Virus record (IMG/VR): IMGVR_UViG_3300032236_002285
Coordinates: 1-64,000 of that record
Strand: one strand, 5' to 3'
Length of the DNA stretch: 64,000 nt
A program made the position numbers and the translations under genes. Below, in pieces: positions 38,196 to 63,809 of the stretch. Under the pieces are notes generated by a model. That model had not been told where the DNA came from. It saw only the letters and a list, made by a program, of their open reading frames with translations, and made no database searches. Numbering within the stretch: the stretch's first letter is position 1; every line of letters begins with the position of its first letter.

Positions 38196-40340
38196 ATGGC
38201 GTTTGCTCCACAACAAGAAAGACAAATGGTTTTCACAACCAAATTGGTAGATGATGCTACAGATAAGATTAATGACGGTGTTGTTGTTAAGAGATATCAA
38301 AATCCTTGGTTAAAGTCTGAAGTAGGACTTAGAAGAGCCGGTGTTACATTTAAAATGACCGCTGATGAACAATCAGAATATGTTAGGTGTGCTTTAGATG
38401 TTCATTACTTTACTGAAAAGTATTGTAAGGTTAAAACCGAAGATGGTTCTATTAATAATATAAAACTAAGAGATTATCAAGAAGAGATATTAGATAACTT
38501 TGTAAACAACAGATTTAATATTTTAATGGCATCTCGTCAGGTTGGTAAAACAATCTCATCATCTATTTTCATGTTGCATACAATTTTATTTAATAATGAT
38601 AAAAATATAATGATTGTAGCCAACAAAGGTGATACAGCAGTAGAGATTGTTGATAAGATTAAATCAATTTATTCATTATTACCTTTCTTCTTAAAACCAG
38701 GTATTAAAACTTGGAATCAAAAGTCATTAACATTTGAAAATGGTTGTAGAATTAAAACATCTGCTAGAACAAAGACTCCAGCCATCGGTTTTACCATTGA
38801 CGTACTTTATTTAGATGAGTTTGCTCATATTCCTTCAAATATTATTGAGCCTTATTATACCGCGGCTTTTCCAACTGTATCAGCCGTTCAGAATTCAAAA
38901 ATTATTATTACATCTACTCCAAATGGTATGAATTTATTTCATAGATTATTGATAGATGCGGAAAGACCTGAGGGTGATCCTTTAAAAAATAACTATAAAC
39001 CAATGAGGGTTTATTGGTATCAAGTACCTGGTCGTTTCGTTACTTATATAAGGTTAAATGCTCATAAATTGTATGAACATGGTGTCACTAAAGAAGACAT
39101 TTTTAATACTGTTAGTGATGCTTGGTCTTCTGTTACTAAGGTTGAGATGAAGTTTATCACAGATACAATGAAAGATGTCATTTATGTTTATAATAATGAT
39201 AAGTGTACTGATGAAGATGTTAGAAAAATGACATTTATTGATAGTAAAGGACACGAGGTTCCTATTTTAGCAATATCAGAAATGACAACCTGGAAAGAAG
39301 AAGCCATTAAGGACATTGGTGGTGAAGATGCGTTTAACCAAGAATATGGTTTAAGATTTATTAATGCTTCTAAGTCATTATTAAACGAAGCAATTATTGA
39401 TGAGTTATTAAGAAATAAAAAGCATTATGTTCATGAGCCTATAATGGAATTTGATAAAAGACTAAAATTTAGTTATGCCGATTTAAAATGGGTAGATGAT
39501 GATGAGGTTTTTATACCTATCATGAGAAAAGATTATAAATATGTAATATCGGTCGATATATCAGAAGGACTTGGTCAGGATTACTCTATTATAAATATAT
39601 TTAAGATATCTGAAAAACCAAGAGATTTAATAGAAATTCAAAAACCATCTTATAAGTCAATAGTTGATTTCTTTAGGTTAGAACAGATTGGTATTTATAG
39701 AAATAATTACATATCTGTCAAGCAGTTGGCTGAGTTACTTTATATGATAGTATTTGAATATTTAAACCCGGATAACTGTAAGGTGGTTGTTGAGTTAAAT
39801 AATTATGGCAACACTTTATTTGCTGAATTGCCACATGTATTTGATGGTAATAATAATTATGGTTCTTCGGTATTTGTTAGATATAAACACAGAGCAGACG
39901 CTACTGAAGAAAAGGTCGGATTAAAAGTGGGTGAGAATAAAAATCTTATGGTTAAAGATTATCAAGATTTGATGCAAAGTAAGGGTTTTGTTATTACCAA
40001 TGAAGAAAACATAAGAGAGATTACAACATTTGTTAAACACACTACATCAGCAGGTAATACTAGATATGCCGCTGACGTTGGACATGATGATACCGTAATG
40101 ACAATTGTCAATGCTACCACTGTGTTTGGTAGACATGACTTTAGTGAGATGATTGAAGAGTGGTCAAGTAAGTTTGTTGATAAGGAGTTTATGAGTTATG
40201 TTCAAGAAACATTAAAAAATATGGACTATGTAGAAGGTTTAGACTATGGTCAAGTCTTAAAAATAAGAAAACAGCAAATGAATCGATTTAAGGCTAATAA
40301 TAATGGATTTGGTACGGGTACTAATTGGTTTGGTAAATAA
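38196..40340 (+). CDS. gp17: Terminase large subunit
   Basis: LRDYQ, SRQVGKT Walker A, LYLDEFA Walker B, ITSTPNG, VDISEGLGQDYS, HDDTVM. Confidence 0.95.
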   Translation: MAFAPQQERQMVFTTKLVDDATDKINDGVVVKRYQNPWLKSEVGLRRAGVTFKMTADEQSEYVRCALDVHYFTEKYCKVKTEDGSINNIKLRDYQEEILDNFVNNRFNILMASRQVGKTISSSIFMLHTILFNNDKNIMIVANKGDTAVEIVDKIKSIYSLLPFFLKPGIKTWNQKSLTFENGCRIKTSARTKTPAIGFTIDVLYLDEFAHIPSNIIEPYYTAAFPTVSAVQNSKIIITSTPNGMNLFHRLLIDAERPEGDPLKNNYKPMRVYWYQVPGRFVTYIRLNAHKLYEHGVTKEDIFNTVSDAWSSVTKVEMKFITDTMKDVIYVYNNDKCTDEDVRKMTFIDSKGHEVPILAISEMTTWKEEAIKDIGGEDAFNQEYGLRFINASKSLLNEAIIDELLRNKKHYVHEPIMEFDKRLKFSYADLKWVDDDEVFIPIMRKDYKYVISVDISEGLGQDYSIINIFKISEKPRDLIEIQKPSYKSIVDFFRLEQIGIYRNNYISVKQLAELLYMIVFEYLNPDNCKVVVELNNYGNTLFAELPHVFDGNNNYGSSVFVRYKHRADATEEKVGLKVGENKNLMVKDYQDLMQSKGFVITNEENIREITTFVKHTTSAGNTRYAADVGHDDTVMTIVNATTVFGRHDFSEMIEEWSSKFVDKEFMSYVQETLKNMDYVEGLDYGQVLKIRKQQMNRFKANNNGFGTGTNWFGK

Positions 40341-40369: not shown

Positions 40370-40654
40370 TTAATTATTTGCTTCCATTGTCGCACTTAGT
40401 CCAGCACTTCTTAGTTTATCCTTCATTGTTGAGATTGTTTCTATATCACCATATTTAACATCACAAAATCCGTTATAGTGAACTATGTGAGCACACTGAG
40501 TTGCTTGCTCTTGCTCGTGTTTACAAACTTTCATTAAACAAGTGATAACCCAATCAAACGTATTGTGATCATCATTGTGAAGTATTAACTTATAAGGTTT
40601 TGATAAAATCTCATCTACCTTTGATTCAGTTTTCTTTTTGGTAATTGTCGCCAT
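40370..40654 (-). CDS. clpS: ATP-dependent Clp protease adaptor ClpS
   Basis: YKLILHNDDHNTFDWVI...AHIVHYNG. Confidence 0.85.
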   Translation of the reverse strand: MATITKKKTESKVDEILSKPYKLILHNDDHNTFDWVITCLMKVCKHEQEQATQCAHIVHYNGFCDVKYGDIETISTMKDKLRSAGLSATMEANN

Positions 40655-42280: not shown

Positions 42281-42847
42281 ATGAAGCATATTAGAACATA
42301 TGAAAGTTATCGTGTTAAAAAGAATAGAGAAGAAATTATTAGAGAATCTGTTCTTCAAGTTAACGATATTTACAAAGTAAAGACAATGATTGATATTCCT
42401 CAATCTTTAATCAATGCTTATGTAAAAAAAGTAAAAGATACTACTGGTAAAAACTTACGCACGTTCTTTGGTGATGTTGATATTGCTGAAGAAATTGTAA
42501 AGTTTATTAATATGGATAACTTAGATGTTGATAAAATCCCTGGTGGTGCTTTAATGGGTGGTGGTCAATCACAAACTCAAACACAATCACAGGCTCAACC
42601 TCAAGTTCAAGTAGAAGCACAACCTCAAGCTCAAACTCAAGAAGCTCCTCAGGCACAAGCTCAACCAGCTCAAACTGAAGAAGCTCCTCAAGCTCAAGCA
42701 CCTGCACAAGGTGAATTTGAAGAACCTGCACAAGGACAAGCTCAAGCACCTGCACAAGGACAAGCTCAGGCTCCTGCTGAAGAGGAAGAAGCTCCAGCAC
42801 AAGGTGAAGAAGAAAAAGAAGAAGGTGAAGAAGAATTACCTCTTTAA
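42281..42847 (+). CDS. Protein with CTS-like N-terminus and Q/A/P/E low-complexity tail
   Basis: MKHIRTYESY...IIRES; AATATATA at 42248; terminator at 42870-42899. Confidence 0.7.
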   Translation: MKHIRTYESYRVKKNREEIIRESVLQVNDIYKVKTMIDIPQSLINAYVKKVKDTTGKNLRTFFGDVDIAEEIVKFINMDNLDVDKIPGGALMGGGQSQTQTQSQAQPQVQVEAQPQAQTQEAPQAQAQPAQTEEAPQAQAPAQGEFEEPAQGQAQAPAQGQAQAPAEEEEAPAQGEEEKEEGEEELPL

Positions 42848-42964: not shown

Positions 42965-43654
42965 ATGAAAGTTTGTTGTTCATGTAAACAGGTAAAAACA
43001 CTTGATTCATTTGGTAAATTAAAATCAAGTAAAGATGGCTATAGACATAATTGTAAAGATTGTAGAAAAATATACTCTATAGATAATAAAGATAAAATTA
43101 AAGAATATAGAAAAGGTTATTATTTATCAAATAAAGAAAAGTGTAATTATAAAAGTAAGCAGTGGTACATAGAAAATATAGAATTCAAAAAAGAATATGA
43201 CAAAGAATATGCTTTAGTAAATAAAGATAAAAGAAGTGAAACTTATAAGAAGTGGAGAAATGATAATATTGATAAAATAAGAGAATATAAAAAAAATTAT
43301 TATCATAATGTTACTACAAAAGATCCTGATAAACTAATTAAAGTTTCTGCTAGGTCTTTAGTTAAGAGATTTATGAAGGTTAAAAATCACAAAACAAATG
43401 AGATAATTGGGTGTTCTTATGAGTATCTAAGATTTTATTTAGAATCTAAATTTGAAAAATGGATGACTTGGGATAATTATGGTTTATATAATGGTGAATT
43501 AAATCATGGGTGGGATATTGATCACATAATACCACTATCGTCTGCTAAAACAGACGAAGAATTAATTAGATTAAATCACTATACTAACTTACAACCTCTT
43601 TGTAGTAAAGTGAATAGAGATATTAAAAATGATAAAATTGATTTTTATATATAG
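42965..43654 (+). mobile_element. HNH-type homing endonuclease
   Basis: N-terminal CxxC...CKDC; WDNYG...WDIDHIIPL...HYTNLQPL. Confidence 0.75.
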
Positions 43655-43657
43655 TTA

Positions 43658-44272
43658 ATGGCTTATATTAAAAAATTTGAGAGTTTTCAAAGTCAATCTA
43701 TATTGGTTATAGTTGATGTTCAGAAAAGCTTTCGTAAGTTTTTTTCAGAAATGTATCTGAATGAATTAAAGAAGTATTGTAAACAATTTGATATTGTTTA
43801 TCAAATTTTTGATAATCACATAGATGGTAAGAATGTGGATAAAGATTATTTATATGATGATGAGCCGATTATTCCTATTCATAAAGATCTTTATCATTTC
43901 CCTAATCAAAAAGAACTTATTGAAAAAAGATACAATTATAAAGTAGATGCTGACTTTTATAAGAAAATTCTAGATAAAGAAGTATATAATGATATTTCTG
44001 ATAAAGAAGATAAGAAATTATTAAAGAAAGGTGATATATTTCCTACTAAAGAATATACATACATAGTTTATATTGGTAATAACCATCAGTGGTATCACTG
44101 CCCTAAGAAGTTATATGAGTTATTAACATCATTAAAAGATAAAGAAGTTACAATAGTTGGTGGTGCTGATGGTGAATGTCTTGAAGACATTGTAACCACC
44201 GCTGAAAGTTTAGGCGTTAAAATTAAAAGAAATTACAAGTATATCTATACTGCTAGTAGTTGTCCGATTTAA
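43658..44272 (+). CDS. Cysteine hydrolase (isochorismatase/nicotinamidase-like) with CTS-like N-terminus
   Basis: ILVIVDVQKSF; VTIVGGADGECL; N-terminus MAYIKKFES. Confidence 0.6.
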   Translation: MAYIKKFESFQSQSILVIVDVQKSFRKFFSEMYLNELKKYCKQFDIVYQIFDNHIDGKNVDKDYLYDDEPIIPIHKDLYHFPNQKELIEKRYNYKVDADFYKKILDKEVYNDISDKEDKKLLKKGDIFPTKEYTYIVYIGNNHQWYHCPKKLYELLTSLKDKEVTIVGGADGECLEDIVTTAESLGVKIKRNYKYIYTASSCPI

Positions 44273-44760
44273 CCCTCGTCAGGCATATCAAAACAAATTC
44301 TTAAAACATCACCGTCAAATCCAACCGAACATTGTTCAAAGTTAGAAAAAGCTTGAAACCTCGGAACAATTTCTTCTTGAAGTAGTTTAAATATTTTTTT
44401 AATTTTATTATTATTTGCCATAATAATGTTCTTTAATTTTTCTAGATTTTCGATCTGATTGTCAACTGAATAGCCAAGTGGTGTATAAAGTAACTCTATA
44501 TTACCTGGTTCATCTGTTGGTGGTATTACTTCAAGTAAATATTTAGCTGTTAAGTAAGTTCCTTCTTCATCAACTTCCTCATCATTTATTTGAGGTATCG
44601 TTAATTCACAATCGTAAAAATAGTCGTTCTCTTTTGTATAGTCGTGAAATTCGCAGTGGAAATAATCAGATAATTCCATCATAATCTCTTTGAATGTTTC
44701 AAAATCACATTCTTCTCCTGAAGCTTCGTTGAACTTTTTTAAGTAAGTCATCTTTTTCAT
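44269..44760 (-). CDS. Acidic protein with CTS-like N-terminus (MTYLKKFNEA)
   Basis: 163-aa ORF. Confidence 0.65.
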   Translation of the reverse strand: MKKMTYLKKFNEASGEECDFETFKEIMMELSDYFHCEFHDYTKENDYFYDCELTIPQINDEEVDEEGTYLTAKYLLEVIPPTDEPGNIELLYTPLGYSVDNQIENLEKLKNIIMANNNKIKKIFKLLQEEIVPRFQAFSNFEQCSVGFDGDVLRICFDMPDEG

Positions 44761-45845
44761 AGTGTATCTATAAATTTATATAGTTTTTTAGTATATTCTT
44801 TTCTTTTGTATTCTGCATTTGTCATACAATAAGCAACAAAAGCAAAGTACTTAACTTTCTCTATTAGTACTTCTCTTGATAGTACACCACCAGCATATCT
44901 AAACTCAACATAATTATTGGATAGTTTTGTTATATTGAAGCCAAGATTCTTAAATCCGATATCAGTAACTTTTTTACTTATGAATTGATTTAATACAACT
45001 TCAGCTTCTTTTAAATTATGTAGGTCTAAAGATTTTAGCTTTAACTTTTCTTTATCAGTTAGTTTTCTCAAATATGGTATTAAAGAACCACAAAACTTGT
45101 TATTCATTCTCCAAGTCATGTCTTTGAATGTGTAGGGTGTTGTTTCTTTTTCTGAGAAGTCATTTAACAACATTAAACCTTTAATTGGATTCCACTCTAC
45201 TGGTTGGTTTGAACCAATGTTTATGTGTATACCAGTTCTTTCTGAGAAGTACCAATAATCTTGTTTTTCTAAATCATTATAAAAGTCATTTATCATCTCA
45301 ATTGATTCTGATAAACTTGGTATGTAAGTTTTTGGTTTAATTTCAATACCTCTATCTAAAGTAGAATCACCCACAAAATCAATCTTTCTATACCATTTTC
45401 TTGTAAAGTTAGGCATATGTTGTTTAACCATCCTTTTTAGATGTGAATAATTCTCCTCGTAAATAAATGATTTAATTGAGTTTTTAAGATGATCTATTAT
45501 TTCTTTTTCTCTTTCAGTTTCGTATTTATTAATATCAAACATCTCTTCAAATGTATTTAAATCAATAGATTTATCTTCAACATGATCATATAATTTATAC
45601 ATTAAATCATAAACTAAATCTTTTTCGGATTTCTTTCTTATTCTCATGTCTTTGTAAACAATATCTATAATATCTTCTACCGCATCTTCGTCAATATCTT
45701 TAAATTTAACCTTAATATTACTTCTATCTAATGTTTCTATTTCAAACTCAAATGCCACCGTGAAGTAATCGCTGAAGCTTTCAATCATTGCGATATCTTT
45801 AGGGTTTACTTCTTCAAATAAAGAGAATTTAATTAGATGTTTCAT
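44757..45845 (-). CDS. Putative amidoligase (COOH-NH2 ligase type 2) with CTS-like N-terminus
   Basis: AFEFEIE, DSTL..GIEI, TGIHINIG, VEFRYAGG; N-terminus MKHLIKFSLFEE. Confidence 0.7.
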   Translation of the reverse strand: MKHLIKFSLFEEVNPKDIAMIESFSDYFTVAFEFEIETLDRSNIKVKFKDIDEDAVEDIIDIVYKDMRIRKKSEKDLVYDLMYKLYDHVEDKSIDLNTFEEMFDINKYETEREKEIIDHLKNSIKSFIYEENYSHLKRMVKQHMPNFTRKWYRKIDFVGDSTLDRGIEIKPKTYIPSLSESIEMINDFYNDLEKQDYWYFSERTGIHINIGSNQPVEWNPIKGLMLLNDFSEKETTPYTFKDMTWRMNNKFCGSLIPYLRKLTDKEKLKLKSLDLHNLKEAEVVLNQFISKKVTDIGFKNLGFNITKLSNNYVEFRYAGGVLSREVLIEKVKYFAFVAYCMTNAEYKRKEYTKKLYKFIDTL

Positions 45846-45893
45846 ATTGTCTATATATATAAAATTAATATATACTAAAAATTAATGTGAATT

Positions 45894-46340
45894 ATGCCAG
45901 CTCGTTCAAAAACACAACAAAGATTAATGGGTCAAGCTTATGCTTACAAAACAGGTGAGTTAAAGTCAAAAGATATGGATCCAGAGTATGCTGATGAGAT
46001 AAAGAAATTAGCTAAGTCAATGACTGAGAAACAGCTAAGAGATTTTGCTAAGACAAAACATAAAAATCTTCCTGAGAAAGTAGAAGAAAAAATAAAAAGA
46101 TTTGATTCTTTTAATGAATCTATTGAAGATGGTATGAATGATAGAGTTGTCTATATAATAATAGACCAAGATATGCACAGTTATGAAGCTATTCTAGGTA
46201 TATATGACACATTTGAAAAGGCAATGAACTCTAATGTGTGGTCAAATAGAGGTATAACTCCTAATGAAGAAGGTGAAGGAGATTCTCTATTCATCTATAA
46301 AGAGTATGTGAACAAAGAACTACAACCAAAATATAATTAA
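45894..46340 (+). CDS. DUF3008-like protein with internal CTS-like motif
   Basis: MPARSKTQQRLMG...SMTEKQLRDFAKTKHKNLP followed by KIKRFDSFNES. Confidence 0.65.
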   Translation: MPARSKTQQRLMGQAYAYKTGELKSKDMDPEYADEIKKLAKSMTEKQLRDFAKTKHKNLPEKVEEKIKRFDSFNESIEDGMNDRVVYIIIDQDMHSYEAILGIYDTFEKAMNSNVWSNRGITPNEEGEGDSLFIYKEYVNKELQPKYN

Positions 46341-46344
46341 AAAC

Positions 46345-46370
46345 AAAAACCAGTCATTTGACTGGTTTTT
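46345..46370. terminator. Bidirectional intrinsic terminator
   Basis: AAAACCAGTCA-TT-TGACTGGTTTT. Confidence 0.75.
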
Positions 46371-46743
46371 ATGTTATAACTGCATATACATTATAGTCTG
46401 CTATTTGAAATAGTATCTCCATATATTCCTGATATCTTTCGGGGTCTTCATAAAAGTTAACTTGTAATTGATAAGATATTGAATCTAATTCAGGTATATA
46501 ATTTTTTACTTGATTTCTTAATTCCGCTTCAATTGTTTCGGCTGATAATCTTGTCTCATGTAAATATCTTGGTAAATCTCCGCCAAAATTTGGCTCACAT
46601 AATAATTCACCTCTATTGGTGAATATCATCATCTCCCATTTTTGCACGACAACTTTAACAAGATCATCTTCAATGATTTGAGAATCATTAAATCTTGGGT
46701 GTCCAGTGTATTCAATATAAAAATCTGTAAAGTCAAAAGCCAT
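46369..46743 (-). CDS. gp25: Baseplate wedge subunit / sheath initiator
   Basis: FTNRGELLCEPNFGGDLPRYLHE...YIPEL. Confidence 0.8.
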   Translation of the reverse strand: MAFDFTDFYIEYTGHPRFNDSQIIEDDLVKVVVQKWEMMIFTNRGELLCEPNFGGDLPRYLHETRLSAETIEAELRNQVKNYIPELDSISYQLQVNFYEDPERYQEYMEILFQIADYNVYAVIT

Positions 46744-46775: not shown

Positions 46776-47738
46776 TTATAGTAAAATCTCTCTGAATTTA
46801 CCAACTATTGTTAAACCTAAAACAATAGGGTCAGTGTTGGTTTCTAGCTTGGAAGAATAATCAGCAATAATAAAATTACATTCAAATAATTTATCTATAT
46901 TCTTACTCTCTGAGATAGACCAATCAATAAATGGCCTGCCTAATAGTTTAATCATGACATCAATCTTTTCAGCGCCAAAGTTAGTCATTAAAAAGTGATA
47001 TATTTTCTCATAATCTAAAGATTTATCATAGATACAATTGTATAAGTCTGTTTTTACTTTATTAGATACATTTGAAGTATTATCACCAAGACTACCTGTT
47101 TCTAAGTAGTTTTGAACTTCAACCATTATAGACCTAAAGTCTGGAAACTTCTTAGTAATAATAGAAATTAAATCTTCTTTAGGTATTTGTTTACCTTCTT
47201 TAGGTAGAATTACATTATTAATTCTTTTATAAATCTCTTGTTTAAGATATTTCTCTTCTTCAACACCTTGACAATCAAAGTTTATTTGAGGAATTCTTGA
47301 TTTGATTCCATCAGAAATCTTATTTAAGTGATTGGTGGTAATAATGAATCTAACATTCTTATTGTACTTTTCTATAAAAGCTTTGAATGCGTCTTGGAAT
47401 TGAGCAGATACTCTTTCAAACTCATCTAAGAAGATATATTTAATATCAGAATCTGTCTCCATCATTGGTTTGAATTTACAAAAATCTTCTATTTCACTTC
47501 TTAAAACATCAATAGATGTGTATAAAGATGAGTTTAGTTCTAAGTAAGGCTTATCTTTTGTGTACTTACCAACAAGTATTCTAGCTAAGCTAGTTTTACC
47601 AGTTCCAAAGTGACCGTAAAATATAAAGTTTTGATTTATACCATTTTCAAAGTGTTTCTTGATTCTTGGTAAAAGAATAACATCGTCCATATTCTTTGGA
47701 CGCCATTTTTCCCATAAAAGTAAAGATTTAACTGACAT
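46776..47738 (-). CDS. gp44: Sliding clamp loader large subunit (RFC-like AAA+)
   Basis: LWEKWRP, GHFGTGKT, FLDEFE, FIITTN, KSR, FPDFR. Confidence 0.9.
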   Translation of the reverse strand: MSVKSLLLWEKWRPKNMDDVILLPRIKKHFENGINQNFIFYGHFGTGKTSLARILVGKYTKDKPYLELNSSLYTSIDVLRSEIEDFCKFKPMMETDSDIKYIFLDEFERVSAQFQDAFKAFIEKYNKNVRFIITTNHLNKISDGIKSRIPQINFDCQGVEEEKYLKQEIYKRINNVILPKEGKQIPKEDLISIITKKFPDFRSIMVEVQNYLETGSLGDNTSNVSNKVKTDLYNCIYDKSLDYEKIYHFLMTNFGAEKIDVMIKLLGRPFIDWSISESKNIDKLFECNFIIADYSSKLETNTDPIVLGLTIVGKFREILL

Positions 47739-50773: not shown

Positions 50774-51865
50774 TTATGCTTCTGTTGAAACTTCAACTTC
50801 TGAGTAAACCGTTTGTAACATTCTGAGTGATACTTGATAAGGGTCGCAGTTAGAAGCAGGTCTTCTATCTTCAAAATATCCTTTGTTTTCTACAATTGCT
50901 TGAGCTGGAATTCTTATAGAAGTGTCTCTTGTAGAGAATCCATAACTAAAATCGTTGATACTTGATGTTTCATGAGCACCAGTTAATCTTTGGTCGTTGT
51001 ATAATCCATAAACTTCAATGTGTTCTTTTTGATATTTTTCCAATCTACTCATAGTATCTTTGATAATATCTAAACCACCTTCTTCTCTCATTTCTTTAGT
51101 AGAGAAGTTAACGTGACAACCTGTTCCGTTCCAATCACCTTTAATTGGTTTTGGGTGAAGTGATACATTTACGTTATGTTTCTCCGCAACTCTATCAAGA
51201 ATATATCTTGAAACCCATAGTTGATCAGAGCCATTTAAAGCGGTAACTGGTCCAATTTGATATTCCCATTGTCCTAAAAGAACTTCCGCATTTATACCAG
51301 AGATATCTAAACCAATTTCCATACACATATTCATATGTTCTTCGACAATTTCTCTACCAATTACATTGTCAGCGCCTATACCACAATAGTAATCACCTTG
51401 AGGTCTTGGAGCGATGTTTTCTTGAAAGCCTAATGGTAAACCAATACCTTCACCAAAAGGTGAACCTGACTTGTGCATTAATGTGTATTCTTGTTCCCAA
51501 CCAAACCAAGGAAGTTCATTTTTAACATAATTTTCGTTTAACTTTAATGCTTTTAATTTTTCGGATAATGCTTTTCTGTGATTTGTTTTGTGTGGTGTTC
51601 CATCTGGGTTTAAAACTTCACAAAAAACTAATTTATTTGTTCCTTTTCTGAAAGGATCATAGGTTACAAATACAGGCTTTAGTAAACAATCTGTATTTTT
51701 ACCTTTACCTGATTGAGCTTGTAGTGTTGAACTCCCATCAAAAGACCATACCGGAAAATCATTAGGACTCATTGAGTCGATTTCATTAGTAATTTTAGTT
51801 TTACTTCTAAGTCTTTGTGGATTTGAACCATCAAGCCAAATGTACTCTAATTTGATATTACTCAT
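50774..51865 (-). CDS. glnII: Glutamine synthetase type II
   Basis: LEYIWLDG, WSFDGSST, EQEY, GINAEV..GQWEYQIGP, HPKPIKGDWNGTGCH, RLTGAHET, YFEDRRPASNCDPY. Confidence 0.93.
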   Translation of the reverse strand: MSNIKLEYIWLDGSNPQRLRSKTKITNEIDSMSPNDFPVWSFDGSSTLQAQSGKGKNTDCLLKPVFVTYDPFRKGTNKLVFCEVLNPDGTPHKTNHRKALSEKLKALKLNENYVKNELPWFGWEQEYTLMHKSGSPFGEGIGLPLGFQENIAPRPQGDYYCGIGADNVIGREIVEEHMNMCMEIGLDISGINAEVLLGQWEYQIGPVTALNGSDQLWVSRYILDRVAEKHNVNVSLHPKPIKGDWNGTGCHVNFSTKEMREEGGLDIIKDTMSRLEKYQKEHIEVYGLYNDQRLTGAHETSSINDFSYGFSTRDTSIRIPAQAIVENKGYFEDRRPASNCDPYQVSLRMLQTVYSEVEVSTEA

Positions 51866-56205: not shown

Positions 56206-56656
56206 ATGCTGCTTGTTTTGGATAATCTATATAAAAGTATTTTATATTATTGTCAATGATTAATTGATTAATTTCAATCTCTACATTTGATTCTATCAAT
56301 GATTTTAACAAATCACCCATATCAGTACTTAATGGCTTTATACCTAATGTTAGTTTTTCAACTAAGTCGTCTTTTATTATAAAGTGCATAGACTTTACAT
56401 CAAAACAAGCTTCTTTTATTTTTGCTTCTTCTTTAATATTTGGTGTCATCATACCCCAAATCATTCCTTTGTTGTATATTTCTTCAATATCAAACTGAAC
56501 TCTTCTTCCTTCTAATAAGTTAGTTAGTTTAATCTCTCTTTTAAATGAAATCCAGTCGCTAAAATTTTTAAGTATATCTTCATAATACTCTAATTTAGCA
56601 TCTTTTAAAATGACATCATATTTATATGTTTCACTATTTAATGATAAAAGTCCCAT
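56204..56656 (-). CDS. Hypothetical protein
   Basis: 150-aa ORF coupled to rnr. Confidence 0.6.
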   Translation of the reverse strand: MGLLSLNSETYKYDVILKDAKLEYYEDILKNFSDWISFKREIKLTNLLEGRRVQFDIEEIYNKGMIWGMMTPNIKEEAKIKEACFDVKSMHFIIKDDLVEKLTLGIKPLSTDMGDLLKSLIESNVEIEINQLIIDNNIKYFYIDYPKQAA

Positions 56657-59875: not shown

Positions 59876-62038
59876 ATGAAACCAGTATTAATTATAGAAA
59901 ATTCAACAAACTCTCTTATTAGAGAGAATAATGGTTCACAAAAGAAGGATTATATTTTAGGTGGTACATTCACAGAATTTGGTGTTAAAAACCGTAATGA
60001 AAGAATTTACACTGCTGAGAAATTTCTTCCAGCGTTACAAGAACTAAATGAAAGAATGAGCAGCTTAGGTGTTGTTTATGGTGAGTTTGATCATCCAGAT
60101 GTTTTCGATACATCTCTTTCTAGAGCATCACACATCATTACAAAAGCTAATTATGTTAAAGAGTCAAATCTTGTTAGTGGTGAAATCAGATTATTAAATA
60201 CTTATTGGGGTAGAGAAGCTAAGGCATTGGTCGATGACGGATGTCCTGTTTTTGTTTCTTCAAGAGCAGCTGGTATCACTGAATCAGATGGTACTGTTTC
60301 GTTAAAAAAATTATTCACTTATGATATCGTTGCTGATCCGGGTTTTGCTTCAGCTAAAATGTCTATCAAGACGCTTAATGAATCATTAGGATATAATGAA
60401 AACTCTAACTTTAGGATATATGAAATGTCCGATGAGTCCAAAATAAATCAACTATTTGATATGAACAAAAATGAATTTGTTACAAAGCAACAGTTAACTG
60501 AATATTCTCAGTATTTAGTTAAGGAATTAGCTTCTACTAAAAAAGAAGTTAAAGGTGCTCTTACTAAAGGTAACTTATCTCCAAAGAAAATGGAGCAACT
60601 TTTAGAGTACTATGAAGAGTTAAATTCAACAAATGCTCAAGTTGTTAAATATCTAGATTATTTGGCTGAAAAAGTACAAGTTATGGTTAATGAGAACAAG
60701 TCGTTAAAAGAAACAACTGACAAACTTATTAAGCACAATGACTATTTAGCTGAAAATTTAGAGAAAGCTGTTAACTACTCTGAATATTTAGCTGAAAACT
60801 TAGACAAAAATATTGAGTATTCTGAATACTTAGCTGAGAACTTAGATAAGAACATTTCTTACTCTGAATACATTGCTGAAAACTTAGATAAGAACATTTC
60901 TTACTCTGAATATTTAGCTGAAAACTTAGACAAAAATATCGAATACTCTGAATACTTAGCAGAAAATCTTGATAAGAATATTGCTTATTCAGAATATATC
61001 GCTGAAAACTTAGACAAAAATATTGCATACGCTGAATACATTGCTGAGCACGTTGATAATTCAATTGCTTACTCTGAATACTTAGCAGAACATGTTGAAG
61101 GTAACATTGCTTACTCTGAATACATTGCTGAACATTTAGATGATAACATTGCTTATTCAGAATATATTGCTGAAAATCTTGACAAATCAATTTCATATCA
61201 AGGTTTAATCGTTGAAAAGTTAAATTCTAAAAAATTAAACGAATCAATGAATGAAGAAGATGAGGAAGCTTTCCCATCATTACATGATGCTGGTTTTGAA
61301 GATGCTCACGAAGAAGAAGGTCATGAAGATGCTCACGAAGATGACGAAGAAGATTGTGGTCCAATGGGTCATGAAGAAGAAGGTCATGAAGAAGAAGCTC
61401 ACGAAGACGTTCACGAAAATAAAGAAGAAGATGACGAAGAAGATTGCGGTCCAATGAGTCATGAAGAAGAAGGACATGAAGATGAAGAAGAAGAAAACTG
61501 GGAAGTTAAAGGTAACAGCGATTCTGAATTATCTGAGTCAATAAATAAATTAATTGAAGAAGCTAAAAAACGTAAAGTTTCTGAAAATAGTGATTTGAAT
61601 TTCTTAAAATTCTTAAACAAATCACAAGTAGATAGTTTCTATGCTTTGTCTGATGAAGACCAAGAGGCTGTTAAATTTCACATAAGCGAAAGAAATTACT
61701 TCACATCTAAAGATGTGTTAAGCCTAATCGCAGAAGCACTATCATCTAAGAATGAATCTCTTGAAGAAAGAGTTATCAGATTAATGCCTGAAAACACTAA
61801 GGCTATCTGGAGTCAAATGAATGAATCTGCTAAAAAATCTATCTTATCACAAGCTAGACTTTACCCAGCTGAAGTTTTAATGACTGAATCACAAATTGAA
61901 CATTTCTGGTTAACTAGAAATTTCAAGAAAAACGAATCTGTAACTAAAAAGTTAGTAGCTCATGAAAGTTTAATACAAGAAGATAAACTTTCTGATAATG
62001 ACGTTACTGCGATTATGGAAAGATTCAAAAACATCTAA
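59876..62038 (+). CDS. gp21: Prohead protease fused to scaffold/core protein (gp21+gp22-like)
   Basis: KNRNERIY, GEFDHP, ASHII, VSSRAAG, YDIVADPGF, followed by coiled-coil repeats and an acidic tract; directly upstream of the MCP. Confidence 0.9.
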   Translation: MKPVLIIENSTNSLIRENNGSQKKDYILGGTFTEFGVKNRNERIYTAEKFLPALQELNERMSSLGVVYGEFDHPDVFDTSLSRASHIITKANYVKESNLVSGEIRLLNTYWGREAKALVDDGCPVFVSSRAAGITESDGTVSLKKLFTYDIVADPGFASAKMSIKTLNESLGYNENSNFRIYEMSDESKINQLFDMNKNEFVTKQQLTEYSQYLVKELASTKKEVKGALTKGNLSPKKMEQLLEYYEELNSTNAQVVKYLDYLAEKVQVMVNENKSLKETTDKLIKHNDYLAENLEKAVNYSEYLAENLDKNIEYSEYLAENLDKNISYSEYIAENLDKNISYSEYLAENLDKNIEYSEYLAENLDKNIAYSEYIAENLDKNIAYAEYIAEHVDNSIAYSEYLAEHVEGNIAYSEYIAEHLDDNIAYSEYIAENLDKSISYQGLIVEKLNSKKLNESMNEEDEEAFPSLHDAGFEDAHEEEGHEDAHEDDEEDCGPMGHEEEGHEEEAHEDVHENKEEDDEEDCGPMSHEEEGHEDEEEENWEVKGNSDSELSESINKLIEEAKKRKVSENSDLNFLKFLNKSQVDSFYALSDEDQEAVKFHISERNYFTSKDVLSLIAEALSSKNESLEERVIRLMPENTKAIWSQMNESAKKSILSQARLYPAEVLMTESQIEHFWLTRNFKKNESVTKKLVAHESLIQEDKLSDNDVTAIMERFKNI
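60733..61200 (+). repeat. Coding tandem repeat, 42 nt / 14 aa (YSEY[LI]AENLDKNI[AES]), 10 full copies plus degenerate flanks
   Basis: Read directly in the translation of 59876..62038. Confidence 0.95.
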
Positions 62039-62114: not shown

Positions 62115-63809
62115 ATGTCACACATTAGAATAGACAAAACAAAAGCAGTTAAGAAATGGGCTCCTGTATTGGAGAACATGGGCGTTGCTGCTGATAGAGT
62201 TGAATGGATGTCAGAAATGGCTGAGTATCACTCAATCAATGAAAACGCATATGTAAATGCTTCTAACGTAGCAGGTATGGGTAGTGTATTGAATCCAGTT
62301 GTTGGTTCATTAGCTGGTAACCCAGGTAACTACACAAATGCTTACGGTAACGTAGCAGGTTCTGGCGACGTAGGTCAAAACTTACTTCCAGTAGCTATGA
62401 AAATCGCGGGTCAAACTATCGGTTTAGACTTAGTAGCTGTTAAACCAACTCCTGGTCCAAAAATCGATTTGTTATATATCGACTTCCAATATGACGATAT
62501 TAACACATCATCAAATGAAAGACCACAAGTTTTCAAATTGACTTGTGATAACGTAGCAGCTATCGAAGCAGCTATTACTTCTGATCTTTCTGGTTATTCA
62601 ATTAATCAAAGTCAAGGTGGTTTACAAGGTGGTAGAGTATTCTACGGTATTACTGCATCTAGCGTTTATAAAACAACAACTGAACCAGGTACTAAAACAA
62701 ACATCGTTGAGTTCTTAGGTTTCTCTCGTGTTGATGGTTTACCAATGTTCAGAGCTTACAGACAAAATAACTCTACAGCAGTAGGTGCTTATAATAACAC
62801 TTTTGACGCAACTAAAAACACTTTTGACCAAACTAGTCCAATAGTTTCTCAAATTTTAAGTATCTCTGGTGTAACTCCAACAGCTAACTCTAATAAAGCA
62901 GTTCAATTAGTATCTGCTCTTGAAGATCATCTTCCTGGTTTCTCTGCAAACTGGACATCTTCTACAGGTGCTGCTTCTGGTAACTACCCAATGGGTCGTC
63001 AAGCAGATGATGACAGCTATGCTGGTGTTATCGGTCCAAAAATTTCTTCTAAAACTGTTGCAGTTGGTACTATTGAAGTATCTTCAGCTCTTAGAAGAAC
63101 TGAAATTGAAGATATCAAAGCTAATACAGGTATGGATATCGTTCAAAAAATGGAATCAATCCTTGTTAACGAACTTTCTCAAACAATCTCTAAACAAATT
63201 GTTGCTAAAGTATTCGAAATGGGTGATTTGAACAGAACAGGCGCTCCTGCTTCTTCTGCAACTGCTAACCCTAACTCACTTTCAGGTTGGACAATTTTTG
63301 ACTTGGATACTGCATACGCATCTAACCAAGTTGGTGGTGAAACAACTCACGCTGTTCAACGTAAGTTGATCACTAAGATTGCTCACGCTTCTAACTATAT
63401 CGCAACTGAAGGTCGTGTTGGTCCTGCTCAATACCTTATCACAAACGGAGGTCTTGCTGCCGCTTTACAAGATATCGCTGGTTATACAATTAACCCAGTT
63501 AAATCTAAATTAAACGGTCAAGGTCAACTTTATCCAGTTGGTTCAATCGGAGATATCTCTATCTATGTAGATCCATATCAAAGATACAACGATAATAGAA
63601 TCGTTCTTGGTAGAAAAAACAACCCAGATCAACCAGGTATCATTTTCGTACCTTACTTGATGGCTCAGTCTATCTCAGTTATCTCTGAAGCTACATTCGC
63701 TCCACGTATGTTACTTCGTTCAAGATACGCTGTAACTGAAGTTGGTTGGTACCCACACAAGCAATACATGACTATTAAAGTTAATGATGCTGCTCAATTA
63801 CTTAACTAA
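62115..63809 (+). CDS. gp23: Major capsid protein
   Basis: KKWAPVLE, QTIGLDLVAVKP, IYVDPY, GIIFVPY, TFAPRMLLRSRYA; probable processing site SINE near residue 43. Confidence 0.93.
   Translation: MSHIRIDKTKAVKKWAPVLENMGVAADRVEWMSEMAEYHSINENAYVNASNVAGMGSVLNPVVGSLAGNPGNYTNAYGNVAGSGDVGQNLLPVAMKIAGQTIGLDLVAVKPTPGPKIDLLYIDFQYDDINTSSNERPQVFKLTCDNVAAIEAAITSDLSGYSINQSQGGLQGGRVFYGITASSVYKTTTEPGTKTNIVEFLGFSRVDGLPMFRAYRQNNSTAVGAYNNTFDATKNTFDQTSPIVSQILSISGVTPTANSNKAVQLVSALEDHLPGFSANWTSSTGAASGNYPMGRQADDDSYAGVIGPKISSKTVAVGTIEVSSALRRTEIEDIKANTGMDIVQKMESILVNELSQTISKQIVAKVFEMGDLNRTGAPASSATANPNSLSGWTIFDLDTAYASNQVGGETTHAVQRKLITKIAHASNYIATEGRVGPAQYLITNGGLAAALQDIAGYTINPVKSKLNGQGQLYPVGSIGDISIYVDPYQRYNDNRIVLGRKNNPDQPGIIFVPYLMAQSISVISEATFAPRMLLRSRYAVTEVGWYPHKQYMTIKVNDAAQLLN

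What the first reader, a model, noticed from the sequence alone, without database searches (positions are those of the whole stretch)
43658..46340. Cluster of four tag-bearing genes including an amidoligase and a cysteine amidohydrolase
Seen: a cysteine hydrolase (+), an acidic protein and an amidoligase (-), and a DUF3008-like protein (+), all with the CTS-like motif. Known: COOH-NH2 ligases form amide bonds (e.g. glutamylation) and isochorismatase-family enzymes hydrolyse amides such as nicotinamide. Inference: packaged writer/eraser-like enzymes, or an injected NAD- or peptide-modifying counter-defence kit.
Basis: inference. Interest (0 to 1): 0.6.

Follow-up and report, generated by a model that had tools for sequence, protein, structure and literature searches.

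The report
Capsid-tagged enzyme genes in huge phage
Four real genes in the virion-gene region of a 476-kb uncultured phage, including a divergent cysteine amidohydrolase and a glutamine-synthetase-fold amide ligase, carry a short peptide much like phage T4's capsid-targeting signal; about a tenth of the phage's proteins carry it, so these proteins are probably loaded into the head, but nothing shows that they work as a pair.

Summary
Pfam, PHROGs, NCBIfam and PADLOC recognise only the DUF3008 domain.

Fold predictions confirm the two enzyme calls:
- The 204-aa protein has an isochorismatase/nicotinamidase-like fold with a conserved Asp-Lys-Cys set and a D-x-H motif.
- The 362-aa protein has a glutamine-synthetase/Amidoligase_2-like fold with conserved ExExE, HxN and ExR motifs.

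The "tag" is real. An N-terminal M-[KR]-x-[IL]-K-[TK]-[YF]-x-x-F-x-E peptide heads about 63 of 620 ORFs, against fewer than 1 in shuffles. It is constrained at the protein level and sits on unrelated folds. It resembles the T4 IPII/IPIII capsid-targeting sequence in the positions that matter in T4.

The window also encodes a T4-type prohead protease fused to a scaffold. The scaffold part holds about 11 repeats of YSEY[IL]AE, which resemble T4's cleavage and targeting motif.

Packaging is therefore the best reading (about 0.5), but it is unproven. The writer/eraser or kit idea is not supported: only the hydrolase-ligase adjacency recurs, and only inside one syntenic clade. The acidic and DUF3008 genes are strain-variable, and the DUF3008 tag is internal.

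The parts
43658..44272 (+). Tagged isochorismatase/nicotinamidase-like cysteine hydrolase, 204 aa. The tag is aa 1-13 (43658-43696) and the catalytic domain starts at beta-1, aa 15.
   Evidence: AF2 model pLDDT 89.5. The top 28 VIA-align rows are all isochorismatase-superfamily chains, Z 8.2-10.3, then a drop to 7.1. Foldseek gives nicotinamidases at probability 0.96-0.99. The PDB profile hit is Pnc1 at E 0.005, with the VDxQ Asp and the catalytic Cys aligned. D20, D52, K90, H143 and C174 are kept in >=90% of 61 sequences.
43646..43654 (+). Promoter-like TATATATAG box 4 nt upstream of the hydrolase ATG, overlapping the end of the HNH gene.
   Evidence: The same box family precedes the MCP, protease, portal, sheath and TerL genes.
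44269..44760 (-). Acidic 163-aa protein (pI 4.3) with a short-form tag (aa 1-13, 44722-44760). Its start overlaps the ligase stop by 4 nt. Its stop overlaps the hydrolase gene by 4 nt, convergently.
   Evidence: The tag residues K3, Y6, K8, K9, F10, N11 and E12 are invariant or nearly so. There is one clear paralogue at 376187-376678. No family or fold was assigned.
44757..45845 (-). Tagged glutamine-synthetase-fold amide ligase (Amidoligase_2-like), 362 aa. The tag is aa 1-12 (45810-45845). A helical insert spans about aa 47-130.
   Evidence: AF2 pLDDT 84.5, with residues 1-11 below 50. VIA-align gives glutamine synthetases at Z up to 10.9, YbdK 8.0, Dop 7.8 and PafA 7.1. The nearest ESM Atlas cluster is viral PF12224 at TM 0.64. 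E33, E35, E37, D160, E168, H207, N209, E314 and R316 are invariant in 46 sequences.
45846..45893 (.). 48-bp divergent intergenic region with TATATATA-type boxes facing both the ligase and the DUF3008 gene.
45894..46340 (+). DUF3008 protein, 148 aa. It comprises the DUF3008 domain (aa 3-63, 45900-46082), an internal Met-less tag-like segment KIKRFDSFNES (aa 66-76, 46089-46121), and a small C-terminal domain with weak DUF7336/DpnD-PcfM-like similarity.
   Evidence: Pfam PF11450 at E 5e-12. Relatives keep aa 1-79 and swap or drop everything after NES. C-terminal fold leads have TM about 0.5.
42281..42847 (+). Neighbouring tagged 188-aa protein with a Q/A/P-rich linker and an acidic tail ending ...EEELPL. 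It belongs to the conserved block upstream of the hydrolase.
42965..43654 (+). HNH endonuclease inserted between the 188-aa gene and the hydrolase. It is a mobile insertion, not part of the unit.
   Evidence: phrog_1035 at E 7e-15. It is absent at this site in LR745206 and LR756502.
59876..62038 (+). T4 gp21-like prohead protease fused to a scaffold-like C-terminal part. This is the presumed reader and cutter of the tag.
   Evidence: phrog_207 at E 1e-31. PF03420 matches weakly. tblastn hits 676 phage records, mostly T4-like, and spans the separate protease and scaffold genes in Serratia phage BF. The protein holds 5 of the genome's 48 NES tripeptides.
60739..61186 (+). 10.7 tandem copies of a 42-nt (14-aa) unit, YSEY[LI]AENLDKNI, inside the scaffold part.
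   Evidence: The repeats are conserved in LR756501 at 54% identity. They follow the same arom-x-x-arom-[LI]-x-E pattern as the T4 CTS YQEFIAE and the T4 gp23 segment FGSFLTE.
62115..63809 (+). T4 gp23-like major capsid protein.
   Evidence: phrog_138 at E 4e-26.

Best explanation
The window is the start of a roughly 476-kb Mahaphage-type huge phage with a T4-type head. Its closest relatives are the 634-735-kb uncultured phages predicted to infect Bacteroidetes.

The four genes are independent, separately transcribed accessory or core genes. They lie in the conserved TerL ... gp25-like/clamp-loader block. What unites them is a portable peptide of 10-13 residues, M-[KR]-x-[IL]-K-[TK]-[YF]-x-x-[FY]-x-E, or the short form ...[YF]-L-K-[KR]-F-N-E-[SA].

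Most likely this peptide is a T4-type capsid-targeting propeptide. It would form an amphipathic helix whose aromatic pair docks on the coiled-coil scaffold; the scaffold itself is built of YSEY[IL]AE repeats. That would carry the attached protein into the prohead core, after which the gp21-like protease would cut the peptide off behind the Glu. The mature proteins would stay in the head and enter the host with the DNA.

The two enzymes are probably active. One is an Asp-Lys-Cys amidohydrolase of the isochorismatase/nicotinamidase superfamily. It acts on a small amide, and nicotinamide is the leading but unproven guess. The other is an ATP-dependent carboxylate-amine ligase of the glutamine-synthetase/Amidoligase_2 superfamily, substrate unknown.

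Shown: the genes, the folds, the conserved motifs, the genome-wide modular tag, and the T4-type head genes. Inferred: targeting, cleavage, packaging, injection and substrates.
For: 1. Folds and motifs: ligase; hydrolase.
2. In both models the tag is an unstructured appendage ahead of the first strand. Untagged relatives start directly at the domain.
3. The tag heads 63 of 620 ORFs against fewer than 1 in shuffles, and it is N-terminal-specific.
4. Synonymous codon use inside the tag equals the genome's, and substitutions are conservative (K/R, F/Y, I/L). The constraint is therefore on the peptide.
5. It sits on unrelated folds: this hydrolase and ligase, plus NUDIX, DeoC, a zeta-toxin/AAA_33 kinase, OmpA and Toprim-like proteins elsewhere in the genome. 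In LR756502 a tagged SET-domain protein occupies the slot between hydrolase and ligase.
6. T4 IPIII and IPII begin MKTYQEFIAE and IPI begins MKTFKEF. In T4, residues 4 and 7 target and residues 8 and 10 direct cleavage (PMC9026906). These correspond to the two most informative tag positions and the following [IL]-x-E.
7. 51 of 63 tags have a hydrophobic-x-E within aa 5-18, against 177 of 557 untagged proteins (p 8e-14). The residue after the Glu is mostly S, E or A.
8. T4-type portal, protease+scaffold and MCP lie within 20 kb. The scaffold carries about 11 CTS-like repeats, conserved in the 735-kb relative. The T4 gp23 N-terminal region holds the same pattern, FGSFLTE.
9. The hydrolase keeps its tag in 12 of 14 orthologues at 62-80% identity, while the letters of the tag drift.
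10. A TATATATA-type box is found upstream of 35 of 63 tagged genes against 139 of 557 others (p 1e-6). The same box precedes the MCP, protease, portal, sheath and TerL genes.
Against: - There is no proteomic or expression evidence; no RNA run holds the locus.
- A tenth of the proteome is a lot of cargo. The tagged set includes enzymes that one would expect to work in the cytoplasm: a Glu/Gln-tRNA-synthetase-like protein (weak tag), DeoC and NUDIX.
- The hydrolase is as conserved as TerL and the clamp loader (70-72% against 73-78% identity). That is unlike the fast-evolving T4 internal proteins.
- Ligase orthologues at the same site in LR745206 and several IMG/VR contigs lack the tag, so the tag is dispensable for that enzyme.
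- The tag can be internal, or at the C-terminal end of 78-79-aa DUF3008 proteins.
- The position of the Glu relative to the aromatic residues is not uniform.
- The promoter-like box also precedes the RNR large subunit, ClpS and HNH genes, so it is not a clean late-gene marker.
- Neither enzyme reaches any Pfam threshold.
Confidence: 0.5

Rival explanations
1. The tag is a real peptide signal but not for the capsid. It might address proteins to another phage-made assembly, a partner hub or a turnover pathway in the infected cell. The hydrolase and ligase would then act in the cytoplasm during infection.
For: - The tagged set includes metabolic-type enzymes: DeoC, NUDIX and an aaRS-like protein.
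- The hydrolase is conserved like a core gene.
- The tag occurs internally and at C-terminal ends.
- The phage encodes ClpS next to the block.
- The promoter-like box is not confined to structural genes.
Against: - No alternative receptor was identified.
- This reading does not account for the detailed match to the T4 CTS residues that were tested experimentally.
- It does not account for the CTS-like repeats in the scaffold.
- ClpS reads N-terminal L/F/Y/W, which the tag does not expose.
Confidence: 0.27
2. The hydrolase and the ligase form a functional pair that makes and removes one amide bond. The substrate could be a small molecule such as nicotinate/nicotinamide, a DNA base hypermodification, or a protein. 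This could hold whether or not they are packaged.
For: - They are adjacent in 16 of 19 assessable loci of the clade.
- Adjacency survives an inversion of the ligase gene in L063, L066 and L076.
- Their chemistries are opposite.
- The hydrolase has a D-x-H motif aligned to the nicotinamidase metal site.
- One representative fuses the hydrolase domain to the Thoeris inhibitor Tad3 (PMC13728456).
- Pfam amidoligase domains co-occur with thymidine-hypermodification genes in viral contigs (PMC8989533).
Against: - The adjacency lies inside a block that is syntenic as a whole, so it is not independent evidence.
- In the window the genes are convergent and are separate transcription units.
- About 35 more distant ligase loci have no hydrolase within 8 kb, and L067-L069 keep the ligase without the hydrolase.
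- There are 1187 hydrolase hits against 143 ligase hits.
- The genome has no NAPRTase/NAMPT-family gene.
- No DNA-modification genes were seen among the annotated neighbours.
- Erasers of known GS-fold writers are homologues of the writer (Dop for PafA), not isochorismatase-like enzymes (own knowledge).
Confidence: 0.15
3. The motif has no function of its own. It would be a relic of a common leader spread by recombination or gene duplication, or a by-product of A/T-rich, weakly structured 5' coding ends that favour translation initiation in a host without Shine-Dalgarno use.
For: - The tag residues (K, Y, F, I, N, L) have A/T-rich codons.
- There is a slight excess of A-ending codons for T, S, I and R in the tag.
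- Many tagged genes are small paralogues in tandem arrays, for example at 246-249 kb and 373-380 kb.
- The tag marks domain-swap joints.
Against: - The positions are specific, with 2-4 bits each. Substitutions are conservative and synonymous codons are used freely.
- The tag is kept on orthologues while its letters drift.
- It is present on unrelated folds.
- Nucleotide identity that could drive recombination is not conserved.
Confidence: 0.08

Closest known systems
Phage T4 capsid-targeting sequence (CTS) of internal proteins IPI, IPII and IPIII (and Alt), removed by prohead protease gp21
   Same: - It is a short N-terminal propeptide on otherwise unrelated proteins.
- It has K-T-[YF]-x-x-F with an aromatic pair three residues apart, followed by [IL]-x-E.
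- The phage has a gp21-type protease, a scaffold, gp20-like portal and gp23-like MCP.
- The loci are variable, with cargo swapped behind a constant tag.
   Different: - The tag here is about 3 residues longer at the N-terminus (M-K-x-L before K-T-Y).
- There are about 60 tagged ORFs instead of a handful.
- The cargo includes sizeable enzymes and one gene conserved like a core gene.
- The tag also occurs internally or at a C-terminus.
- Protease and scaffold are fused, and the scaffold holds CTS-like tandem repeats.
- Packaging and cleavage are untested.
Nicotinamidase/pyrazinamidase PncA/Pnc1 and other isochorismatase-like cysteine hydrolases (PF00857)
   Same: - Same fold: Z 9-10, about 130 aligned residues.
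- The VDxQ Asp and the GxxxxC Cys align.
- A Lys sits at the end of strand 3.
- D52-x-H54 aligns to the QDWH metal motif of the A. baumannii enzyme.
   Different: - There is no Pfam hit at E<=1.
- Identity is about 15-20%.
- An insertion of about 25 residues follows D52.
- The His of D-x-H is absent in more distant family members.
- H143 is a family-specific conserved residue with no counterpart known to me.
- The protein carries the tag.
- The substrate is unknown.
Amidoligase_2 (PF12224) and the glutamine synthetase / YbdK / PafA-Dop carboxylate-amine ligase superfamily
   Same: - GS-type catalytic fold: Z 10.9 to human GS, 8.0 YbdK, 7.8 Dop, 7.1 PafA.
- The nearest predicted structures are viral PF12224 clusters, TM 0.64.
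- The ExExE strand, HxN and ExR motifs are invariant.
   Different: - Only 1 of 46 family members touches PF12224, at E 0.09.
- It lacks the GS beta-grasp N-domain.
- It carries an 80-residue four-helix insert.
- No Pup-like partner was found: the neighbouring acidic protein has no conserved C-terminal Gly-Gly-Gln/Glu.
Ejection/inner-body proteins of phiKZ, 201phi2-1 and SPN3US, processed by a gp21-related protease
   Same: Giant phages load dozens of proteins into the head and trim them after Glu (PMC9026906).
   Different: In those phages no short common N-terminal address is known, and the propeptides are long and diverse. Here a single compact tag would predict the cargo from sequence.

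Membership tests
T4-type capsid-targeting propeptide (CTS) | A propeptide of 10-19 residues at the extreme N-terminus of otherwise unrelated proteins. | tested here: met
   Met for the hydrolase, the ligase and the acidic protein. The tag precedes the first structured element. Not met for the DUF3008 protein, whose copy is internal.
T4-type capsid-targeting propeptide (CTS) | Targeting residues: two aromatic residues three apart (T4 positions 4 and 7). | tested here: met
   Tag positions 7 and 10 carry 3.3 and 3.35 bits, as F/Y. T4 sequences were read. The role of these residues comes from PMC9026906.
T4-type capsid-targeting propeptide (CTS) | A processing site, [L/I]-x-E, at the end of the propeptide. 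| tested here: inconclusive
   51 of 63 tags have hydrophobic-x-E within aa 5-18 (p 8e-14), but the register varies: IFE|S, FNE|S, KFE|S.
T4-type capsid-targeting propeptide (CTS) | A gp21-type prohead protease and a scaffolding core in the same phage. | tested here: met
T4-type capsid-targeting propeptide (CTS) | Tag-dependent encapsidation and removal of the tag in the prohead. | not testable with these tools
   No virion proteome or RNA run is available. The co-fold of scaffold repeats with the hydrolase gave no verdict.
Isochorismatase-like cysteine hydrolase superfamily | A three-layer alpha/beta fold with a parallel sheet. | tested here: met
   The top 28 VIA-align rows are all from this superfamily (Z 8.2-10.3), and the next unrelated row is at 7.1. 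See also Foldseek.
Isochorismatase-like cysteine hydrolase superfamily | An Asp-Lys-Cys catalytic triad. | tested here: met
   D20, K90 and C174 are kept in >=90% of 61 sequences. The Asp and Cys align to those of Pnc1. The equivalence of the Lys is inferred from its place at the end of strand 84-90. The 3-D geometry was not measured.
Isochorismatase-like cysteine hydrolase superfamily | A match to PF00857 above the gathering score. | tested here: not met
   No hit at E<=0.1, and none in the genome at E<=1.
Nicotinamidase (PncA/Pnc1) specifically | A metal site Asp-x-His plus a further His, and nicotinamide turnover. | tested here: inconclusive
   D52-N53-H54 aligns to QDWH, and D-N-H is kept in the close clade. 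It is absent in distant members. The third ligand is uncertain, and activity is not testable here. No NAPRTase/NAMPT partner is present.
Amidoligase_2 / glutamine-synthetase-fold carboxylate-amine ligases | A GS-type catalytic fold. | tested here: met
   Z 10.9, 208 residues aligned to human GS. The twelve best rows are all from this superfamily. Atlas TM is 0.64 to a PF12224 cluster.
Amidoligase_2 / glutamine-synthetase-fold carboxylate-amine ligases | Conserved acidic, His and Arg residues for metal, ATP and acyl-phosphate. | tested here: met
   E33, E35, E37, D160, E168, H207, N209, E314 and R316 are invariant in 46 sequences. Their one-to-one equivalence to GS residues is inferred.
Amidoligase_2 / glutamine-synthetase-fold carboxylate-amine ligases | A match to PF12224 above the gathering score. 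| tested here: not met
   1 of 46 members at E 0.09, and none in the genome at E<=1.
DUF3008 (PF11450) | A match above the gathering score. | tested here: met
   46.2 bits against a cut-off of 24, covering the whole 57-position profile.
Pup/PafA/Dop-like protein tagging (writer, eraser, modifier) | A small modifier with a conserved C-terminal Gly-Gly-Gln/Glu, and an eraser homologous to the ligase. | tested here: not met
   The C-terminus of the acidic protein is variable. The protein is absent at this site in most relatives. The hydrolase belongs to an unrelated fold.

The most novel reading that the evidence does not exclude
Mahaphage-type huge phages use one compact T4-derived address peptide to load several dozen different proteins into the capsid. 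The cargo would include this amidohydrolase and amide ligase, a SET-domain methyltransferase, and NUDIX and kinase-like enzymes. The injected proteome of an uncultured phage could then be read straight from its genome. The tag would work by mimicking one unit of the YSEY[IL]AE coiled-coil repeat of a fused protease-scaffold.
Probability: 0.4. Interest if true: 0.85.

Novelty: new variant of a known kind. Interest (0 to 1): 0.62.

Why it matters
If the tag is a capsid address, it predicts from sequence which proteins an uncultivable 0.5-Mb phage delivers into its Bacteroidota host at the moment of infection. It would also show that the T4 internal-protein system has been scaled up from a few small inhibitors to dozens of enzymes.

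It gives two enzyme families with no Pfam home a fold and a testable chemistry. It also offers a short, transferable packaging tag for engineering.

I found no description of this motif in the paper library.

If the tag is not a capsid address, it is still an unexplained, strongly conserved sorting-type signal on a tenth of a phage proteome.

Tried and rejected
- **Sequence libraries.** Pfam, PHROGs, NCBIfam and PADLOC gave nothing for the hydrolase, the ligase or the acidic protein. Weak hits (GxGYxYP_C, BESS, DNA_primase_S) were dismissed as chance.
- **PDB sequence profile for the ligase.** Only noise, with EhpF at E 0.07.
- **Co-fold.** Scaffold repeats (aa 250-460) with the hydrolase scored 0.00, "no answer". 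This is neither support nor evidence against.
- **Pup-like reading of the acidic protein.** Rejected, because it has no conserved C-terminal motif.
- **Paralogues of the acidic protein.** jackhmmer found only one, at 376187. A looser "tag + ...ELxD..." likeness to about 10 small tagged ORFs is visible by eye but was not established.
- **ESM Atlas look-ups.** The acidic protein returned only unnamed viral clusters at 0.82. The DUF3008 C-terminus returned weak DUF7336/DpnD-PcfM leads.
- **NAD salvage partner.** PF04095 is absent from the genome.
- **Fusion partners of the hydrolase domain.** Nine of ten long fusions had no Pfam domain. One had Tad3.
- **Promoter-like box as a late-gene marker.** Ambiguous. 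With the box: a tail fibre and the RNR large subunit. Without it: helicase/methylase, topoisomerase II and SbcC-like genes.
- **NES tripeptide as a cleavage motif.** It is not enriched genome-wide (48 observed, 53 expected). It is concentrated in the protease-scaffold (5) and in the first 20 residues of proteins (13). Suggestive only.
- **Sequencing runs.** Three DNA runs from one study and no RNA.
- **Iyer et al. 2009 on amidoligases.** The paper is not held. Statements about it rest on my own knowledge.

Full report
**Context.** The window is the first 64 kb of a single 476,236-bp virus contig with 30% G+C. CheckV puts it at about 97% complete. Its only relatives among deposited phages are the 634-735-kb "uncultured phage" genomes LR745206, LR756502 and LR756501/3. 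These are the Mahaphage clade, predicted to infect Bacteroidetes (PMC7162821).

The window holds the virion module:
- tail sheath, 27403-31293
- large terminase, 38196-40340
- gp25-like wedge protein, 46369-46743
- clamp loader, 46776-47738
- portal, 54435-56162
- prohead protease, 59876-62038
- major capsid protein, 62115-63809

The protease protein hits 676 phage records, mostly T4-like cyanophages and coliphages. In cultured jumbo phages such as Serratia phage BF, the match runs across two separate genes, annotated prohead core protease and scaffolding protein. Here the two are fused.

**Observation.** The four ORFs are exactly as stated. The hydrolase (+) and the acidic gene (-) converge and overlap by 4 nt. 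The acidic gene's start overlaps the ligase stop by 4 nt. The ligase (-) and the DUF3008 gene (+) diverge across 48 bp. All four have homologues in metagenomic huge-phage contigs.

**The hydrolase.** No family library recognises it. An exhaustive search found 148 cluster representatives. In an alignment of 61 of them, D20, Q22, D52, K90, H143, G168, G169, C174 and D177 are kept in at least 90%.

A profile of this alignment has yeast nicotinamidase Pnc1 as its best PDB hit (E 0.005). The VDxQ Asp and the catalytic Cys are in register. The A. baumannii nicotinamidase comes next, and there D52 falls on the Asp of the QDWH metal motif. The window's protein reads D52-N53-H54.

The AlphaFold model is confident (pLDDT 89.5). 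Its 28 best structural matches are all isochorismatase-superfamily enzymes: pyrazinamidase, nicotinamidases, N-carbamoylsarcosine amidase, and biuret/triuret-type hydrolases. They score Z 8.2-10.3 over about 130 residues, and the next row drops to 7.1. Foldseek agrees.

So it is a divergent cysteine amidohydrolase. The nicotinamidase reading is a lead, not a result.

**The ligase.** Forty-six homologues share invariant E33, E35 and E37 on the first strand, D160...R165-G-I-E168, H207-I-N209, and E314-F-R316.

The model (pLDDT 84.5) matches glutamine synthetases best: Z 10.9, with 208 residues aligned to human GS. Gamma-glutamylmethylamide synthetase, YbdK (8.0), Dop (7.8), PafA (7.1) and glutamate-cysteine ligases follow. 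Its nearest predicted structures in the ESM Atlas are viral clusters that carry PF12224 Amidoligase_2 (TM 0.64). The Pfam model itself does not reach it.

It is therefore a new branch of the GS-fold carboxylate-amine ligases. It has an extra four-helix insert at about aa 47-130.

**The acidic and DUF3008 proteins.** The acidic protein (pI 4.3) has no recognisable fold or family. Its first 12 residues are the best-conserved part of the family, and its C-terminus is variable.

The DUF3008 protein is a true PF11450 member over aa 3-63. After that comes KIKRFDSFNES, and then a small domain with only weak DUF7336/DpnD-PcfM-like similarity.

IMG/VR relatives keep aa 1-79 and then either stop or continue with unrelated domains. 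Other relatives carry, in frame and far downstream of DUF3008, a complete tag including its Met, directly after a poly-Lys run (L030, L034, L036, L040, L042). The tag is thus a module boundary.

**The tag.** Many ORFs begin M-[KR]-x-[IL]-K-[TK]-[YF]-x-x-[FY]-x-E. A matrix built from 37 such N-termini gave these counts:

| Set scanned | Hits at score >=10 |
|---|---|
| N-termini of 620 ORFs | 63 ORFs |
| Shuffled proteins | fewer than 1 |
| 134,787 internal positions | 7 |

Four of the internal hits (score >=12) start at an in-frame Met 9-14 residues into the called ORF, so they are probably the true starts.

Synonymous codon use inside the tag matches the rest of the genome. Replacements are K/R, F/Y and I/L/V. 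Selection therefore acts on the peptide.

The tag is modular:
- It precedes the first strand of both enzyme folds as a low-confidence appendage.
- Distant hydrolases and ligases start without it.
- Elsewhere in the genome it heads NUDIX, DeoC, zeta-toxin/AAA_33-kinase, OmpA and Toprim-like proteins, and a tRNA-synthetase-like protein with a weaker tag.
- In LR756502 a tagged SET-domain protein sits in the slot between hydrolase and ligase.
- In multi-domain fusions of the hydrolase, the tag is at the far N-terminus and the domain joints read ...NES....

**Why a capsid-targeting signal is the best reading.**
1. T4 IPIII and IPII start MKTYQEFIAE, and IPI starts MKTFKEF. In T4 the first 10 residues suffice for packaging. 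Residues 4 and 7 carry targeting, residues 8 and 10 direct cleavage, and gp21 removes the peptide (PMC9026906; PMC10229621).
2. The tag contains the same K-T-[YF]-x-x-F core, and its two aromatic positions are the most informative. Many tags continue F-[IL]-x-E as in T4.
3. 51 of 63 tags have hydrophobic-x-E within aa 5-18, against 177 of 557 other ORFs.
4. The phage's protease-scaffold fusion carries 10.7 tandem 14-residue units, YSEY[LI]AENLDKNI. They are conserved in the 735-kb relative and degenerate into plain heptad-like repeats in a more distant one.
5. The unit has the T4 pattern arom-x-x-arom-[LI]-x-E. That pattern also occurs in the T4 gp23 N-terminal region as FGSFLTE, just before Ala66. 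That this is the gp23 maturation site is from my own knowledge.

I infer two things from this. The repeats are both the coiled-coil scaffold and a string of protease sites. The tags mimic one unit and so co-assemble into the core.

**What weakens it.** Nothing shows packaging or cleavage. The co-fold gave no verdict and no RNA data exist. Sixty cargo species, some of them metabolic enzymes, is a great deal. The hydrolase is conserved like TerL and the clamp loader. Ligase orthologues at the same site may lack the tag. The register of the Glu varies.

A TATATATA-type box is enriched upstream of tagged genes (35/63 against 139/557, p 1e-6). It precedes the MCP, protease, portal, sheath and TerL genes. 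It also precedes the RNR large subunit, ClpS and HNH genes, so it does not prove late co-expression.

**Is it a kit?** Synteny says no for the four genes and "unclear" for the enzyme pair.
- In LR745206 the hydrolase and an untagged ligase abut, with nothing between them.
- In LR756502 a tagged SET protein lies between them.
- In L024 an unrelated 124-aa gene does.

Among 57 IMG/VR ligase loci, 20 lie in the TerL...clamp-loader block. Of the 19 that can be assessed, 16 have the hydrolase next to or near the ligase. In three of these the ligase is inverted, and three keep the ligase alone. The acidic gene recurs twice, once in a contig near-identical to the window, and the DUF3008 gene once. 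About 35 more distant ligase loci have neither the block nor the hydrolase.

The adjacency is thus no more than clade-level synteny can explain.

Leads for function:
- the D-x-H motif;
- one fusion of the hydrolase domain to Tad3, a phage protein that blocks the Thoeris TIR enzyme ThsB;
- the reported co-occurrence of Pfam amidoligase domains with thymidine-hypermodification clusters (PMC8989533).

Against an NAD-salvage role, the genome has no NAPRTase/NAMPT-family gene.

**Verdict.** The enzyme calls are right at superfamily level. The CTS analogy is well founded but unproven, at about 0.5. The writer/eraser or kit reading is not supported.

I found no published description of this tag. I rate it a new variant of a known kind: the T4 internal-protein/CTS system, expanded and attached to enzymes in huge phages.

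Noticed in passing
window 59876-62038, repeats at 60739-61186; L101 (LR756501): The prohead protease and scaffold are fused in one 720-aa protein. It has 10.7 tandem 14-aa units YSEY[LI]AENLDKNI, a His/Glu/Asp-rich block, and 5 of the genome's 48 NES tripeptides. The repeats are conserved in the 735-kb relative.
   Followed up: partly
window-wide, e.g. 43646-43654, 45851-45875, and upstream of 62115, 59876, 54435, 38196 and 31293: A TAATATATA/TATATATA[CG] box lies upstream of 174 of 620 ORFs, either about 30 nt or about 12 nt before the ATG. The 12-nt class (hydrolase, ligase, gp25-like, 47789, 6126, 36383) would give nearly leaderless mRNAs. The box also precedes the RNR large subunit.
   Followed up: partly
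window 1-2679 (+): A 5'-open ORF holds more than 170 Gly-Ser-Ser / Gly-X-Ser triplets (27-nt period) and a fibre-like C-terminal end. It looks like a collagen-like tail fibre, and it explains the 44% G+C of the first 2 kb.
   Followed up: partly
window 42965-43654 (+): An HNH endonuclease gene is inserted just upstream of the hydrolase. It is absent at this site in LR745206 and LR756502 but present in L050 and L053. It shares 67% nucleotide identity with HNH genes of Flavobacterium phages.
   Followed up: partly
window 42281-42847 (+): A tagged 188-aa protein has a Q/A/P-rich low-complexity linker and an acidic tail ending EEELPL. The tail is reminiscent of the C-terminal tip of SSB proteins. 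The protein is conserved upstream of the hydrolase in all relatives.
   Followed up: no
L026 6334-6777 (LR756502): A tagged SET-domain protein (PF00856, E 2e-11) occupies the slot between hydrolase and ligase in a relative.
   Followed up: partly
P0280 (622 aa, metagenomic): The hydrolase domain is fused C-terminally to a Tad3 domain (PF25185, E 8e-34). Tad3 is a phage inhibitor of the Thoeris ThsB enzyme.
   Followed up: partly
L030, L034, L036, L040, L042 (IMG/VR contigs): DUF3008 proteins contain, in frame after a poly-Lys run, a complete internal tag including its Met (for example ...KKRKE-MKHLTTFEAF...). This could be a gene fusion or an internal start site.
   Followed up: no
window 50774-51865 (-), 40370-40654 (-), 56656-58536 (-): The phage encodes a bona fide glutamine synthetase (Gln-synt_N and Gln-synt_C), a ClpS adaptor and an RNase II/R (RNB) homologue close to the head genes.
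   Followed up: no
genome 246-249 kb and 373-380 kb (outside the window): There are tandem arrays of small tagged paralogues. Many have a helix motif ...[IL]L.EL.D.G... a few residues after the tag. The acidic protein of the finding and its paralogue at 376187 look like members.
   Followed up: partly
genome 262861-264486 (outside the window): A Glu/Gln-tRNA-synthetase-like protein has a 53-residue N-terminal extension that starts with a weak tag ending F-L-A-E-S.
   Followed up: no
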